A DNA stretch of 64,000 nt from Lepidodermella squamata (taxonomy: Eukaryota > Animalia > Gastrotricha). The notes beneath the pieces are model-generated. The model saw only the letters and a program-made list of their open reading frames with translations, did no database searches and was not told the origin of the DNA. The DNA lies in assembly GCA_047495785.1 (NCBI GenBank), contig JBLDXI010000001.1, forward strand, positions 992,001 to 1,056,000, given 5' to 3'. Shown in pieces: positions 50,060-57,077 of the stretch (its first letter is position 1; the number at the start of each line of letters is the position of its first letter). The translations under genes were made by a program, and so were the position numbers.

Positions 50060-52007
50060 ATGACTCGTATTTTCCCATTCCAGCATCATGATAAATACGA
50101 TCTAGCAAAAGCAGCAGCAACCGAAATCAAGGACAAAATATCAAAACCACGACTGCTGATTGCTGCTCTTATTGTCACATGCGTCATCGTTATTCCTATC
50201 ATCATAGTCAAAACCACTGAAAGGAATAATGCTTTTTTCAAATTCTCTGTCTCTGATTCTCCACTCGGCAGATACCGATTCGCATCAGTGGCCGCTGACG
50301 CCGAAACTTGCTCTGTTATCGGGACTAAGATTCTTGCCAGAGGTGGCTCAGCTGTCGATGCTGCGATTGCGTCAGCTTTATGCGCTGGAGCTACATACAA
50401 CATGCATAGTGCCGGAATCGGAGGTGGTTTTTTCGCAACTATCTGGCATCAAGACTCACAGCAAGCCTTCACTGTCGACGCTCGGGAGGTCGCTCCACTT
50501 GCCTCAACTGAAAACATGTTTGAGAACATCTCATCAATCGTCGGTCCTTATTCGATTGCTGTGCCTGGTGAGATAGCTGGTTACTGGGAATTGCATAAAA
50601 AGTTTGGCAGAATAGAATGGCGAGAATTGTTTCAGCCTACGATCGACTTATGCATGAGAGGTTTTGCAATCAAGCAGCCGCTAGAGGACGCCATTGTTTC
50701 TCTGTTCCAAAAGATATCGAAAAACACCACTAACACCCCATTTGAACTTGCCGGGTAAGGTTCAAACCTCCTCAAAGATTTTATTACTCATATAGTTTGT
50801 AGGACCACCTTCCGACACCCTGACACCGGAGCTTTTTTGAAGAAGGGTTATGTGTTTAAATGCCCTTACTTGGCTACAACTTTGGCAAGAATAGCTGAAT
50901 TTGGCGGTCACACATTTTACAACGGGACTCTTGCAAGAGATATTCTTGCTGATCTTCAAGACGCAGGTTCGCCAATTACGAAAGCTGACCTTGAGAGGTA
51001 TCGAGTGATTTGGCGAAAACCAATGGACGTGAAATTCGAAGGCACCAACAGGCTTCTGAGTATTAATCCACCTGGAAGTGGACCTCTTTTAGGTTTAATA
51101 CTGAACGTGTTATCGGTAATTTCATCGCAGAATTCTACAGATATCAGCTTATTTATGTTCTTAGGGCTACAACTTGACAAGCTCTGACAGTATGGACCCG
51201 CTATTCTACCATCGATTTGTCGAGACCATGAAATTCGCATATGGCTGGCGTTCGTATTTCGGAGACGAGTCTTTCGTACCTGGCTTGGATGGATTAATCA
51301 CGAATTTAACATCAAGCTCGTTTGCGGAGCAAATTCGACTGATGATTGATGATCGAAAGACTAAAACTACCTCTTACTATTCATCTGACCCGCCGATTAT
51401 TCCTAAGGGTCAACACGGGACGTCTCACGTTTCTGTCATTGATGGGCAAGGTAATGCTGTTTCGCTTACTTCTACGATAAACGTCTATCTCGGAAGTGGC
51501 GTGATTGGTAAAAGAACTGGGATCATTTTTAACGATGAGATGGATGACTTCTCCGTACCTGGGAAGGTTAATTACTTCGGATACCAGCCAAGTGAAGCCA
51601 ATTTTGTACGACCAGGTAAGCGGCCGCAATCATCGATGTGCCCGGCGATAATTTTAAAGCAAGACGAAGAAAGTGGGAAATATCGAGCTAGAATGGTCAT
51701 TGGAGCATCTGGAGGATCGAGGATCACCTCAGGAACAGCTTATGCTGCAGCTAGAATGCTTTGGTTCGGAGAAAACCCGAAACAGGCGATTGACGCGCCT
51801 CGTCTGCATCATCAGCTGATTCCAGAGACCTTGGTTTTCGAACCCAGCGTGCCAGGTCAGCTTCTGGAATCGCTGAAACAGCGAGGACATACAAATCAGA
51901 CAGTGAGAAAGATCATGTGTGTTGTGCAGTCCATCCAAGTTTTAGATGAAGGAACAGTTTTGAGTAATTCTGATTATCGTAAGCAGAGTAAAACTGACGG
52001 ATTTTGA
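50060..52007 (+). CDS. GGT1: Gamma-glutamyl transpeptidase (glutathione hydrolase), type II membrane
   Basis: Exons 50060-50754, 50803-51115, 51165-52007. N-terminal TM, GGSAVDAAIA, GIGGG, DARE.AP, autocleavage HG|TSHVSVID..GNAVS.TSTIN, NDEMDDFS, PGKRPQSSM, GASGGSRI. Confidence 0.95.
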
Positions 52008-53388: not shown

Positions 53389-56300
53389 ATGTCAATAACA
53401 AACGTTAACGAAAAAGGCGTAGAACATGAAGATAGCGAAAAGCATGATGTGGCTCTACCCATACCGGTCTTGCCGCGATCAATTCTGTCGGTAACTGAAG
53501 CTGAAGATGGAGAATTCCGACCGAAATCGAACAGCGTGGCTGGTAAACGATCGAGATTCGCTGTTTCATTCAGCGAGCAAAAAGTGCTCGAAACCGCAGT
53601 AGTCGCCGAAGAGCCGACGCCGATTGCCGGGCGTATCAACCGTTTATCGGCTCGATTGTCCTCAAGGATGTCGGAACTGTCATCTCGCGTATCGTCTAAC
53701 GAAGATCCAGAGACCCGTTCTCGAGCTGAGAGTATCAAAATGGCGAGGCGTAATTCGGTTATGACGGATAAGCAGGTTGCGTCCCATTGTTGGCAGGGTT
53801 TTGTCGACTCGTGTTGCGGAAGTTTGCTGCAGTGCGGAAAGGATACTGCCCACGAAATGGAAGAGCTGAAAAACGAGGCCAACATCGACGCCCACAAGAT
53901 CAAGATTCGTCAGCTTGAGCAACGTCTTGGAACAAGCTTGAGAACCGGTCTTCGTGATGGTGATGTTCAGACCCGTCTAGACACGTGTGGCTTGAACAAG
54001 ATTCGCCCGCCGCCAACAATTCCGGAATGGTTCAAATTTTGCAAGCATCTTGTCGGTGGTTTCAGCATTATGCTTTGGATTGGCTCAGCTCTTTGCTTCA
54101 TCGCTTATGGTCTTCAAAAGTCCCAGAGTGACGATGTACCCGGTGATAATCTCTATCTTGGTTGCGTGCTGTCAGCTGTCGTCCTAATTACGGCTACCTT
54201 CTCCTACTTCCAGGAAGCAAAGTCTTCGAAAATCATGGACTCTTTCGCGAAGTTCATGCCAACTTTCGCGACTGTAATGCGATCCGGATCCGAAAAGCAG
54301 GTTCCTGTTGAAGAAATTGTGCCTGGTGACCTTACAATTTTGAAAGCCGGTGATAAGATTCCAGCGGATTGCCGAATAATTGCGTGCTCGAATTTCAAGG
54401 TAGACAATTCCTGCCTTACCGGTGAATCCGAGCCGCAAACACGCTCGGCCGAATTCACGAATGATAACCCGCTTGAGACTAAAAATTTGATCTTCTTCTC
54501 GACTTATGCGATCGAAGGCACTGCGACCGCTATTGTTGTTGCCACGGGCGATAACACCGTCATGGGCCGTATAGCTCGTCTTACAACCGGGATCAAGCAG
54601 AAGCAAACTCCTCTCTCCCGAGAACTCGAGATGTTCGTATACGTCATTTGTGGTGAGTAAATTGTCTACTATGTAGATGCTTTTATTCAATGCAATTTAT
54701 TATTTTAGTTTTCGCTTTCACTCTTGGCATCATTTTCTTGATTTGGATCTTGGCCAAGGATGCCAGCAACTGGATCGGTGCTGTAGTTTTCGCCATCGGT
54801 ATCATCATTGGCAACGTGCCAGAGGGTGTCTTGATTGAAATTGCCCTCTGCCTAACTTTGGCCGCAAAGCGAATGGCGAAACGAAATGCCTTGGTCAAGA
54901 ACCTCGAGGCTGTCGAAACTCTTGGTGCAACATCTACCATCTGCTCAGACAAAACTGGAACTTTGACCCAGAACAAGATGACGGTCGCCCATTTGTGGTT
55001 CAACAACGAAATTCACATTGCTGATATAACCAAGGAGCAAATTGTTGGTAGAAAGTATTCTGCCAATGGCGAAGCAAATGGTTGGACAGCTCTGAGTCGA
55101 GTTGCAACCCTATGCAGTCGCGCTGTGTTCAAGCAAAACCAGGAAAATGTCGATATCATGGAGCGGGAATGTATCGGAGATGGTTCCGAGTCTGGCTTGC
55201 TCAAATTCTGCGAACGCTCTCTTGGTTCAGTTGAGCAATACCGTGGTAAATGGCCGAAGAAGGCTGAAGTTCCATTCAGCAGCGCGACCAAATTCCAGGC
55301 TTCAGTTCACAAGCGGTTGGAAGACGGTCGGTTCATCGTTGTCATGAAAGGAGCTCCTGAGCGTGTCATTGATATGTGTAAAACAATGTGGGTTGGCGAG
55401 GCAAATGGCGGTGAGATTGAGATAACCGACGAAGTCAAAGATAATTTCAACAAGGTCTATGCCGAACTCGGTGGAATGGGCGAACGCGTCCTTGGATTTG
55501 CTGACTTCATGCTGCCAGAAAGCGAATACCCGCCTAATTACAATTTCGTTGTCGACCCTGAACCCAACTTCCCGTTAAAAGGTCTTCGCTTTGTTGGCCT
55601 GGTCGCGCTGATGGACCCGCCGAGACCAGCTGTTCCTGATGCCGTGAGAAGGTGTCGCGATGCTGGCATTCGAGTAGTGATGGTAACTGGCGACCACCCT
55701 GTGACTGCGAAAGCCATCGCTAAAATGGTCAACATTTTTTCGCCTAACGCCAAGACTATTGAAGATCTTCCCGCTGGTTCAACTGAGAAGCCGACGGCTA
55801 TTGTCATTCCAGGCGATAAACTTAAGGAAATGTCCCGAGAGCAGCTTGATAGCGTCATTGCCAACTACCAAGAAATTGTTTTCGCTCGCACCTCGCCCCA
55901 ACAAAAGTTGTTGATAGTCGAAGGGTTCCAACGCGCTGGCAATATTGTCGGGGTTACTGGCGATGGTGTAAACGATTCACCGGCCCTTAAGCAGGCAGAT
56001 ATTGGCATTGCTATGGGCATCACCGGCTCAGATGTCTCGAAACAAGCGGCTGATATGATTTTGTTGGACGACAACTTCGCCACCATTGTATTCGCCATCC
56101 AAGAAGGTCGTCTGCTTTTCGATAACTTGAAGAAAACTGTTTGCTACATTTTGGTCGCCAACATTCCCGAAATCGCCGCTGCTCTTTCCTATGTCGTGCT
56201 CGAAGTTCCTCTTCCTATGGGAACCATTGCTATGTTAGTCATTTGCCTGGTCACTGACATGACCCCTGCTGTTATGCTGGCCTACGAACACCCCGAGGCG

Positions 56301-57077
56301 GATATCATGAAGCGAAATCCAAGAAACCCGAAGACTGACTCGCTGATTACTCAGAAAATGATGTCGGTAGCCTATGGTCAGAATGGAATAATGGAAACTG
56401 CTGGTGCTTTCATGGCCTACACCATTTGCCTATCAGAGCACGGCTTCCTCGCTCGTGATGTGTATTGCGTCGGACTGTCCGGTCGTTGGGATAGTCTTGG
56501 TGAGTATAGGAATCATATAGGATTTATCTATTCCTAACTTTTCTTTATTTTATAGCTTTGAATAATCTCGAAGACTCGTACGGCCAAGAGTGGACTTACA
56601 ATCAGCGGAAAGAGCTCGAGCATACCCTATACGGCGTCTATTTCTTGGCAATGGTAGTCATGCAGTGGATCTGTGTTGTCTGCTGCAAAACCCGTCGCAT
56701 GTCAGTGTTTCACCAAGGATGTAAGGATGATCATTCGAATTTTAGGCATTTTATTAAATAATTTTCTTGTTTTTTGTTTCTAGGGAGAAATCACTATCTC
56801 ACCATTGGTATCGTCGTTGAAACAGCTATTGCAGTACTACTATGTTACTGCCCAGGTGTAAATGATGCGTAAGTCTTTTATTTGTCCATTAATCTGGTTT
56901 ATAATATATTCATTATTTTTTCTCTCATTCAGCTTTTTCATGGCGCCCATCCTTGGTTTACACTGGCTACCTGTGTTACCTTTCACGTTATTCTTCCTGA
57001 CAGTGGACCAATTGAGGAAGGTCGCAATTCGAAAAGGTGGCGAAGGCTCGTTTGGAGAGCGAGAATTCCTATTCTAA
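53389..57077 (+). CDS. P2C (Na,K-/H,K-ATPase alpha-like) P-type ATPase with non-canonical ion-binding residues
   Basis: Exons 53389-54652, 54709-56499, 56556-56720, 56784-56868, 56933-57077. TGES, PEG, DKTGTLT, KGAPE, TGDGVNDSPALK and EDSYGQEWTY (beta-subunit-binding loop) are all intact. Confidence 0.95.

What the first reader, a model, noticed from the sequence alone, without database searches (positions are those of the whole stretch)
54800..57077. Na,K-ATPase-like pump with Asp-to-Cys swaps in the ion-binding sites
Seen: the catalytic motifs are intact, but against Na,K-ATPase alpha1 (pig numbering) TM5 YTLTSNIPE is YILVANIPE (T772I, T774V, S775A), TM6 CIDLGTD is VICLVTD (D804C, codon 56244-56246), TM8 QWAD is QWIC (D926C, 56672-56674), TM9 FEET is VVET, C-terminal KETYY is REFLF, and TM4 gains a Glu (PEGVLIE vs PEGLLAT). 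The H,K-ATPase TM5 lysine is also absent. Known: D804 and S775 coordinate K+/Na+ at sites I/II; T774, D926 and the terminal tyrosines support Na+ site III. Inference: neither a 3Na/2K nor a classical H,K pump, so substrate or stoichiometry is probably different (possibly soft-metal, proton or single-ion transport).
Basis: partly seen in the sequence, partly recalled or inferred. Interest (0 to 1): 0.75.

Follow-up and report, generated by a model that had tools for sequence, protein, structure and literature searches.

The report
Sodium-pump paralogue with cysteine-lined ion pocket
A small invertebrate expresses a relative of the sodium-potassium pump whose ATP machinery is intact, but two of the five acidic ion-binding residues are cysteines; this change is conserved in five old gene copies, so the pump very probably moves different ions or fewer ions than the textbook pump.

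Summary
Window 53389-57077 (+) holds a five-exon gene of about 1149 codons for a P2C (Na,K/H,K-type) ATPase alpha subunit. All catalytic motifs are intact.

Changes against pig alpha1:
- D804C (TGC, 56244-56246) and D926C (TGT, 56672-56674)
- S775A, T772I, T774V, A323G
- a new Glu at position 332
- the tail ends ...EFLF instead of ...ETYY

These are not assembly errors. Two independent public runs hold the gene. cDNA-like contigs splice all four introns as modelled, and 37 of 39 listed strain differences are synonymous.

The same genome has four further paralogues (63-86% identical over the best BLAST stretch, dS saturated, dN/dS about 0.05) with the same C804/C926/E332/A775 signature. They belong to an eight-gene lineage-specific family, whose least-changed member keeps both Asp. 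Two canonical alpha genes also exist.

No orthologue turned up in three word searches, one exhaustive representative search and two metagenome signature scans. Orthologues at about 55% identity could be hidden.

Cys at 804 occurs in other lineages (a sponge, fungi, an ichthyosporean), always with a non-acidic 926, but never with Cys at both.

Best reading: an active pump that has lost Na+ site III and has a remodelled site I/II, so its stoichiometry or substrate is altered. This is untested.

The scan already found a sister paralogue of this gene on other DNA of this genome (s1-422782).

The parts
53389..54652 (+). Exon 1. It encodes a 150-residue N-terminal extension, the Cation_ATPase_N domain, TM1-TM2, the A domain with TGES (54418-54429), and TM3.
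   Evidence: ORF. Pfam PF00690 and PF00122. TIGR01106 profile positions 4-269. A cDNA-like contig of run X2 starts at 53407.
53746..53841 (+). Conserved motifs in the N-terminal extension: RRNSVMT (a consensus basic-kinase site) and C-x7-CC-x5-C (CWQGFVDSCCGSLLQCGK). The second is probably a palmitoylation or regulatory patch.
   Evidence: Conserved in L002, L003 and L004, and also in L010 and L008, which do not carry the double Cys. Coordinates. The function is inferred only.
54653..54708 (+). Intron 1 (56 nt, GT..AG, phase 1)
   Evidence: Sequence. Joint 54651/54708 (cut +1) in an X2 contig.
54709..56499 (+). Exon 2. It encodes TM4, the P and N domains, TM5, TM6 and TM7.
   Evidence: ORF. 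About 57% identity to Na,K-ATPase alpha, E about 1e-216, against PDB. TIGR01106 profile positions 273-866, 814 bits.
54819..54839 (+). TM4 motif PEGVLIE. E327 is kept (54822-54824) and there is a new Glu at position 332 (54837-54839). A323G lies just upstream.
   Evidence: E332 is conserved in L001-L005 and L008/L009; L010 has Gln there.
54948..54962 (+). DKTGT, holding the phosphorylated Asp369
56145..56171 (+). TM5 motif YILVANIPE: Y771 kept, T772I, T774V, S775A (56157-56159), N776 and E779 kept.
56238..56258 (+). TM6 motif VICLVTD: D804C (TGC, 56244-56246), G806V, T807 and D808 kept.
   Evidence: TGC or TGT in all five paralogues.
56500..56555 (+). Intron 2 (56 nt, GT..AG, phase 1)
   Evidence: Sequence. 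Joint 56498/56555 (cut +1) in X2.
56556..56720 (+). Exon 3. It encodes the TM7-TM8 loop with the beta-subunit contact motif SYGQ (56576-56587) and TM8 with QWIC (56663-56674). Q923 is kept; D926C is TGT at 56672-56674.
   Evidence: TIGR01106 profile positions 869-922.
56721..56783 (+). Intron 3 (63 nt, GT..AG, phase 1)
   Evidence: Sequence. The X2 loose end before 56784 reads the last ten bases of exon 3 (table 7).
56784..56868 (+). Exon 4: TM9 with VVET (56813-56824; E954 kept).
56869..56932 (+). Intron 4 (64 nt, GT..AG)
   Evidence: Sequence. Joint 56868/56933 in X2.
56933..57077 (+). Exon 5: TM10 and the C-terminal tail ending REFLF (57060-57074), then stop TAA at 57075-57077. An AATAAA follows a few bases downstream of the stop.
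   Evidence: The tail ...GSFGEREFLF is identical in L001, L002 and L003.

Best explanation
This is a transcribed, intact gene for the catalytic alpha subunit of a P2C-type (Na,K/H,K-family) P-type ATPase. It is one of five ancient paralogues in this genome that share a remodelled ion pocket.

Shown:
- The phosphorylation and dephosphorylation machinery is intact: TGES, DKTGT, KGAPE, DPPR, TGDHP, TGDGVND.
- The beta-subunit contact motif SYGQ is intact, and the genome has several beta genes.
- 12 of the 19 pocket residues listed for pig alpha1 are kept: N324, V325, P326, E327, Y771, L773, N776, E779, T807, D808, Q923, E954.
- Seven are changed: V322I, A323G, T772I, T774V, S775A, D804C, D926C.
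- A Glu is gained at position 332, and the C-terminal YY becomes LF.

Inferred:
- The only carboxylate that belongs exclusively to Na+ site III (D926) is gone, and so is the tyrosine tail that controls that site. The third Na+ site is therefore dismantled.
- The Asp shared by sites I and II (D804) and the site I serine (S775) are neutral. At most one or two monovalent cations can then be bound, by E327, E779, D808, N776 and main-chain carbonyls. E332 possibly restores negative potential on the cytoplasmic side of TM4.
- The protein most likely still cycles through E1P and E2P with ATP. It would carry fewer ions per cycle, or a different cation pair, than 3Na+/2K+. One example would be one or two Na+ or H+ out against one K+ or none.
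- As in gastric H,K-ATPase and the Artemia lysine pump, this would trade ions per ATP for a steeper gradient or for different electrogenicity.
For: Gene model and expression. All four introns are spliced in X2 contigs. One X2 contig carries a 24-nt stretch that I recognise from memory as the reverse complement of a SMART cDNA adapter.

P2C identity:
- PDB phmmer gives E about 1e-216 to Na,K-ATPase alpha against about 1e-84 to Ca pumps.
- Pfam domains fit.
- TIGR01106 matches collinearly over exons 1-3 with 357 + 814 + 67 bits against a cut-off of 946.
- In the tree the gene sits inside the animal P2C group.

Pocket residues.

Conservation and selection:
- The same signature is present in L002-L005.
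- L001/L002 have dN 0.097, dS 1.8, dN/dS 0.054. dS is not computable (saturated) for nearly all the other pairs.
- 37 of 39 differences between the window and public runs are synonymous.

Order of events: the family member L010 keeps D804, D926, S775 and T774. The Cys clade (SH-aLRT 100) is nested in the eight-gene family (SH-aLRT 97).

Roles of the residues:
- Five acidic residues are critical, D926 interacts only with the site III ion, and it must be deprotonated to bind Na+ (10.1101/106724).
- Protonated D926 or D926N weakens site III Na+ binding (PMC5233988).
- The C-terminal tyrosines govern site III and leak currents (PMC2812498 abstract).
- Fewer sites give a steeper gradient in H,K-ATPase (PMC6706254) and in the Artemia pump (PMC10756188 abstract).

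Beta genes are present in the genome.
Against: There are no functional data of any kind. I could not build or inspect a three-dimensional model of the pocket: the joined protein was not made, and the structure tool returns no coordinates. Where E332 points, and how far apart the two thiols lie, is therefore unknown.

A Cys thiolate could in principle still carry negative charge. K+ can also be coordinated by neutral oxygens (PMC6706254), so some Na+/K+ exchange cannot be excluded.

Tissue, membrane and beta partner are unknown.

The organism is unidentified. Other agents of this scan guess a rotifer, so the ecological argument is weak.
Confidence: 0.55

Rival explanations
1. The two thiols, together with D808, E779 and E327, form a site for a soft or borderline metal (Zn2+, Cd2+, Cu+). 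This would resemble the Cys2-Asp site of ZntA-type P1B pumps, so the clade would be P2C pumps converted to metal transport. A variant of this idea is that the pump is gated by redox state or by metal binding at the thiols.
For: Two Cys replace two carboxylates in the transmembrane pocket and are conserved in five paralogues. The N-terminal extension carries a four-Cys patch. Other notes of this scan report Cys/His rewiring of ion sites in NCX genes of the same genome (s1-401875, s1-379613; I did not check these).
Against: Positions 804 and 926 serve different sites in the canonical structures: I/II and III. A joint Cys2 site would therefore need helix rearrangement, and I could not measure the geometry.

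The N-terminal Cys patch is also present in L010 and L008, which lack the double Cys, so it is not linked to the pocket.

There is no CPx motif and no HMA domain. P1B models score far below their cut-offs.

In every other lineage with C804, position 926 is Asn or Thr, not Cys. That points to neutralisation rather than thiol chemistry as the common theme.
Confidence: 0.1
2. The protein no longer transports ions productively. It would act as a signalling or scaffolding ATPase, or as an uncoupled ATPase. Pump-independent roles have been reported for C. elegans CATP-1.
For: Two essential ion ligands are lost. The regulatory-looking N-terminal extension with RRNSV is conserved. The family has expanded beyond what housekeeping needs, to at least 11 P2C loci. 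The scan also reports a dead PMCA-like pump in the same genome (s1-430940; I did not check this).
Against: All catalytic motifs and 12 of 19 pocket residues stay conserved over saturated dS, including E327, N776, E779, D808 and Q923. A non-transporting scaffold would not be expected to keep them. The transmembrane signature itself, including C804, C926 and E332, is conserved rather than drifting.
Confidence: 0.15
3. It is still an ordinary Na+/K+ exchanger. The cysteines (as thiolates or via water) and E332 would functionally replace the lost carboxylates.
For: Overall about 57% identity to canonical alpha subunits. SYGQ, Q923, E954, N776, E779 and D808 are kept.
Against: The genome already has two canonical alpha genes with all ligands intact (L006, L007). 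The literature describes D804 and D926 as critical, and neutralising D926 weakens Na+ binding at site III. S775 and the YY tail are lost as well. Among 457 retrieved P2C-like proteins, 426 keep D804 and 309 keep D926.
Confidence: 0.08
4. The substitutions are artefacts of assembly or sequencing, or the gene is a decaying pseudogene.
For: None found.
Against: Contigs from two independent runs of different years and studies cover the gene. It is spliced in cDNA-like contigs. All five exons have open frames. dN/dS is about 0.05. The same codon changes are present in four paralogues on other contigs.
Confidence: 0.01

Closest known systems
Canonical Na,K-ATPase alpha subunit (pig alpha1, PDB 3WGU; shark, PDB 2ZXE)
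   Same: About 57% identity over TM4-TM7. The domain order and all catalytic motifs are the same. The SYGQ beta-contact motif is kept, and so are E327, N776, E779, T807, D808, Q923 and E954.
   Different: D804C, D926C, S775A, T772I, T774V, A323G, G806V, T332E, tail EFLF instead of ETYY, and a 150-residue N-terminal extension. The genome has its own canonical copies (L006, L007).
Gastric H,K-ATPase alpha (ATP4A; 1H+:1K+, single K+ site; PMC6706254)
   Same: Same P2C fold. The ion pocket holds fewer usable sites than Na,K-ATPase, which is the analogy for how a lower stoichiometry could arise.
   Different: H,K-ATPase achieves this with Lys791 at the S775 position, salt-bridged to Glu820 at the D804 position. 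Here those positions are Ala and Cys, with no built-in positive charge.
Artemia alpha2KK sodium pump (PDB 8K1L; PMC10756188)
   Same: A natural animal Na,K-ATPase paralogue whose ion-site substitutions reduce stoichiometry. It coexists with canonical pumps.
   Different: Artemia has two Asn-to-Lys changes, which add charge. Here two Asp-to-Cys changes remove charge, and a Glu is gained.
Uncharacterised P2C-like proteins with Cys at position 804: Ephydatia muelleri Em0006g213a (P0147), Racocetra fulgida CAG8502028.1 (P0259), Chromosphaera perkinsii (P0215), and metagenomic P0182, P0208, P0209, P0257
   Same: Cys at the D804 position together with a non-acidic residue at 926 (Asn or Thr) in all eight.
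   Different: Only 42-51% identical, and they lie in other parts of the tree. None has Cys at 926 or Glu at 332. None is functionally characterised, as far as my searches show.
C. elegans divergent P2C pumps CATP-1 to CATP-4
   Same: Lineage-specific divergent Na,K-ATPase-like paralogues beside a canonical alpha (EAT-6). CATP-1 has a long N-terminus (my own knowledge; papers listed).
   Different: Not compared here, because I could not retrieve their sequences by name. No nematode sequence grouped with this clade in the tree.

Membership tests
P2C P-type ATPase alpha subunit (TIGR01106, Na,H/K antiporter P-type ATPase alpha) | Collinear full-length match to the family profile above its cut-off | tested here: met
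   Exons 1, 2 and 3 hit profile positions 4-269, 273-866 and 869-922 with 357, 814 and 67 bits. The simple sum of 1238 exceeds the 946.1 cut-off. Each exon alone is below it because it is only a part of the protein. The next best family scores 336 bits.
P2C P-type ATPase alpha subunit (TIGR01106, Na,H/K antiporter P-type ATPase alpha) | P-type catalytic motifs (TGES, DKTGT, KGAPE, DPPR, TGDHP, TGDGVND) | tested here: met
   All are present.
P2C P-type ATPase alpha subunit (TIGR01106, Na,H/K antiporter P-type ATPase alpha) | Beta-subunit dependence: SYGQ motif in the TM7-TM8 loop and beta genes in the genome | tested here: inconclusive
   SYGQ is present at 56576-56587. At least seven PF00287 loci lie elsewhere in the genome and none in the window. 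Physical assembly was not tested.
P2C P-type ATPase alpha subunit (TIGR01106, Na,H/K antiporter P-type ATPase alpha) | Phylogenetic placement among P2C sequences | tested here: met
   The gene falls inside the animal P2C group (SH-aLRT 96-99) but outside the canonical bilaterian Na,K-ATPase clade.
Canonical 3Na+/2K+ Na,K-ATPase | Five acidic ion ligands: E327, E779, D804, D808, D926 | tested here: not met
   D804C and D926C.
Canonical 3Na+/2K+ Na,K-ATPase | Ser775 ligand and the C-terminal Tyr-Tyr that supports site III | tested here: not met
   S775A. The tail ends EFLF.
Canonical 3Na+/2K+ Na,K-ATPase | Na+- and K+-dependent ATPase activity with electrogenic 3:2 exchange | not testable with these tools
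   This needs expression and electrophysiology.
H,K-ATPase (gastric or non-gastric) | Lys in TM5 at the S775 position, paired with Glu at the D804 position | tested here: not met
   Ala and Cys stand at these positions. The feature is taken from PMC6706254.
P1B heavy-metal P-type ATPase | CPx-type transmembrane motif, HMA or CxxC N-terminal domain, and a match to the family profile | tested here: not met
   TIGR01525 scores 170 bits against a cut-off of 346, through the shared P domain only. There is no HMA domain and no CPx motif in the translations.

The most novel reading that the evidence does not exclude
The conserved thiol pair turns a sodium-pump scaffold into a pump for a soft metal (Zn, Cd or Cu), or into a pump switched by redox state or metal binding. 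That would be a substrate class never shown for P2C ATPases. The five paralogues would then be a metal-handling or detoxification toolkit of this animal.
Probability: 0.1. Interest if true: 0.9.

Novelty: new variant of a known kind. Interest (0 to 1): 0.6.

Why it matters
How P2-type pumps choose their ions and set their stoichiometry is still studied mainly with engineered mutants and two natural variants, H,K-ATPase and the Artemia lysine pump.

Here nature supplies a graded series inside one genome:
- canonical pumps (L006, L007);
- an intermediate that keeps all the acidic ligands (L010);
- a five-member clade with Asp804 and Asp926 replaced by Cys plus a new Glu in TM4;
- a sister pair with a further degraded pocket (L008, L009).

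All of these are old, and the Cys clade is under strong purifying selection. Expressing the series would test directly which residues set site III and the shared site I/II. It would also show whether a sodium-pump scaffold can be retuned without a built-in lysine.

The recurrent pairing of Cys804 with a non-acidic 926 in a sponge, fungi and protists suggests an unrecognised functional class of P2C-like pumps.

Tried and rejected
Searches for orthologues:
- Word-index searches with exon 2, with the 722-residue ORF of paralogue L002 to lift the length cap, and with the 869-residue ORF of L010. Nothing exceeded 61% identity.
- An exhaustive phmmer search of 1.84 billion representatives. Nothing exceeded 61% and none had the double-Cys signature.
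- Caveat: only the best 120 or 150 hits are listed, and clustering at 50% could fold a 55% orthologue into a canonical cluster. Absence elsewhere is therefore not proven.
- Two degenerate DNA signature scans of metagenome contigs, for A-M-L-x-[IV]-C-L-V-T-D-M and M-Q-W-x-C-V-[IV]-x-C-K, gave 0 hits.
- The ESM Atlas feature search returned only generic P-type clusters.

Organism identity:
- Run and organism names are coded.
- The canonical alpha L006 is about 74% identical to mollusc and brachiopod pumps and less similar to nematode ones.
- Other agents' guess of a rotifer was not verified.

Literature: six searches found no description of natural Cys at positions 804 or 926.

Not run:
- Structure prediction. 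The tool gives no coordinates, and the full-length protein would need the joined exons.
- Complex prediction. No binding claim is made.

Full report
**Gene and observation.**

ORF listing and sequence reading give five exons on the + strand:
- exon 1: 53389-54652
- exon 2: 54709-56499
- exon 3: 56556-56720
- exon 4: 56784-56868
- exon 5: 56933-57077

They are separated by GT..AG introns of 56, 56, 63 and 64 nt. The coding sequence is about 1149 codons.

A phmmer search of exon 2 against PDB sequences aligns it end to end with pig and shark Na,K-ATPase alpha at about 57% identity (E about 1e-216). H,K-ATPases follow, and Ca pumps lie far behind at about 1e-84.

- TM4 motif PEGVLIE: E327 kept, new E332, and also A323G.
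- TM5 motif YILVANIPE: T772I, T774V, S775A.
- TM6 motif VICLVTD: D804C, TGC at 56244-56246.
- TM8 motif QWIC: D926C, TGT at 56672-56674.
- TM9 motif VVET.
- Tail REFLF.

All catalytic motifs are intact. Measured against the 19 pocket residues listed for pig alpha1 in PMC5233988, 12 are kept and 7 are changed.

**The gene is real, expressed and not an artefact.**

Two public runs from different years and studies hold the gene. When their contigs are laid on the window, run X2 skips introns 1, 2 and 4 exactly at my boundaries. Its loose end before 56784 reads the last bases of exon 3, so intron 3 is spliced too.

One X2 contig begins with 24 nt that I recognise from memory as the reverse complement of a SMART cDNA adapter. 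That fits a cDNA library.

Of 39 listed exonic differences between the window and these runs, 35 are at third codon positions and 37 are synonymous. No difference is listed at either Cys codon, although the table was truncated.

**A clade, not a single oddity.**

Searching the window's own 121-Mb assembly with exon 2 finds at least eleven P2C loci. The motif read-out sorts them as follows:
- L006 and L007 are canonical, with all ligands present and tails RETYY and KELYY.
- L011 is nearly canonical.
- L010 keeps D804, D808, D926, S775 and T774, but has Q332 and the tail KEFYF.
- L001 (this gene) and L002-L005 share PEGV[LI]IE, YILVAN, [IV]CLVTD and QW[IVF]C.
- L008 and L009 have E332 with D804P, D926G and E779C.
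- L003 additionally has E779Q.

L002-L005 are 63-86% identical to this gene over the best BLAST stretch.

For L001/L002, dN is 0.097 and dS is 1.8, giving dN/dS of 0.054. For nearly all other pairs dS is too saturated to compute. The Cys codon is TGC or TGT in all five. Asp to Cys needs two base changes. The tail ...GSFGEREFLF is identical in L001-L003.

A maximum-likelihood tree of 74 sequences (IQ-TREE quick search, LG+G4) gives these groupings:
- the Cys clade, SH-aLRT 100;
- the Cys clade with L008/L009, SH-aLRT 81;
- both with L010, SH-aLRT 97.

The whole family lies inside the animal P2C group but outside the canonical bilaterian clade that holds L006 and L007. The simplest history is a lineage-specific family whose ancestor still had both Asp. 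E332 arose first, followed by loss of the carboxylates along two different routes.

**Relatives elsewhere.**

Three word-index searches and one exhaustive search of representatives returned nothing above 61% identity to any family member. Two signature scans of metagenome contigs returned nothing.

I aligned all 457 retrieved P2C-like proteins to one reference:
- Asp stands at position 804 in 426 and at position 926 in 309.
- Cys at 804 occurs in eight: a freshwater sponge, a glomeromycete fungus, an ichthyosporean and several unnamed metagenomic or Logan proteins.
- All eight have Asn or Thr at 926.
- Cys at 926 occurs in four others.
- No protein has both Cys.
- Glu at 332 occurs once.

So the double-Cys plus Glu332 signature is so far private to this genome's clade. 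Neutralising 804 together with 926 appears to have happened repeatedly.

The caveat is that hit lists are truncated and clusters are cut at 50% identity. An orthologue at about 55% in a related animal could have been missed.

**Family membership.**

NCBIfam TIGR01106 (P2C alpha) matches exons 1-3 collinearly with 357 + 814 + 67 bits against a cut-off of 946. Pfam finds Cation_ATPase_N, E1-E2_ATPase, Cation_ATPase, Hydrolase and Cation_ATPase_C.

The SYGQ beta-contact motif is present, and the genome has at least seven beta-subunit loci, none of them in the window. P1B (heavy-metal) models score only through the shared P domain and stay below their cut-offs.

The gene is therefore a P2C member. 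It fails the defining ligand set of the canonical Na,K-ATPase, and it lacks the Lys/Glu pair of H,K-ATPases.

**Mechanism.**

What the papers I read describe:
- E327, E779, D804, D808 and D926 are critical for coordinating Na+ and K+.
- D926 touches only the site III ion and must be deprotonated to hold Na+ there (10.1101/106724).
- Protonated D926, and the D926N mutant taken to mimic it, bind Na+ at site III more weakly (PMC5233988).
- The C-terminal tyrosines control site III and leak currents (PMC2812498 abstract).
- In gastric H,K-ATPase, neutralising the residue at the 804 position leaves one K+ site and allows a far steeper gradient (PMC6706254).
- Artemia up-regulates a pump with ion-site substitutions and reduced stoichiometry (PMC10756188 abstract).

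What I infer for this clade:
- Site III is dismantled: D926C, tail YY lost.
- Sites I and II lose their bridging Asp and Ser775.
- E327, N776, E779, D808 and the TM4 carbonyl region stay conserved.

The most likely result is an ATP-driven pump carrying fewer monovalent cations per cycle, or a different cation pair, possibly with altered electrogenicity (confidence about 0.55).

Rivals and their confidence:
- a thiol-based soft-metal or redox-gated pump (0.10);
- a non-transporting or uncoupled ATPase (0.15);
- an ordinary pump with functional replacement of the ligands (0.08);
- an artefact (0.01).

None of these can be separated without expression and electrophysiology.

**Limits and omissions.**

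The organism remains unidentified.

**Earlier work of this scan.**

Note s1-422782 describes a sister paralogue on another piece of this genome with the same reading ("cysteine-lined ion pocket"). My family read-out agrees with it and places both genes in one five-member clade. This is a repeat finding on other DNA, not independent support.

**Verdict.**

The main inference is supported by sequence, expression and selection, but is functionally untested. This is a new variant of a known kind, with interest 0.6.

Noticed in passing
window 53746-53841: The 150-residue N-terminal extension carries a conserved RRNSV(M/L)(T/S) motif and a CCGSLLQ-type Cys patch. Both are shared by the eight-gene divergent family, including L010 and L008, but absent from the canonical alpha genes. 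They may be phosphorylation and palmitoylation sites.
   Followed up: partly
L008 and L009 (G000:C55:556843-570922): Two neighbouring P2C genes form the sister group of the Cys clade and have a more degraded pocket: D804P, D926G, E779C, N776S, with E332 kept. At least some of the stops seen in the tblastn hits lie in an intron read through in frame (TM8 of L008). I did not check whether the genes are intact.
   Followed up: partly
L010 (G000:C19:2177446-2181774): A two-exon member of the family, about 1160 residues long, that keeps all the acidic ligands but has Q332 and the tail KEFYF. It is the natural intermediate for comparison.
   Followed up: partly
L011 (G000:C54:4254681-4259411): A further divergent alpha-like gene that reads DKSGT instead of DKTGT at the phosphorylation site and QWGN (D926N) in TM8.
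   Followed up: no
L006 and L007 (G000:C13:1325793-1337017): Two canonical alpha genes about 6 kb apart. L006 is almost intron-free over 981 residues and is about 74% identical to mollusc and brachiopod pumps.
   Followed up: partly
L013-L019, L023 (G000:C14:504016-513291): A cluster of probably three or more Na,K-ATPase beta-subunit genes on both strands. Further beta loci lie on C13, C24, C12 and C144, so the beta family is expanded like the alpha family.
   Followed up: no
window 51174-52007: The ORF upstream of the pump gene reads like the C-terminal part of a gamma-glutamyltranspeptidase. I judged this by eye from the translation.
   Followed up: no
P0147, P0182, P0208, P0209, P0215, P0257, P0259, P0359: All eight other retrieved P2C-like proteins with Cys at the D804 position have Asn or Thr at D926. 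Among proteins with Asp at 804 the share is 56 of 360. This hints at a recurrent, undescribed functional class. Shared ancestry among these proteins was not controlled for.
   Followed up: partly
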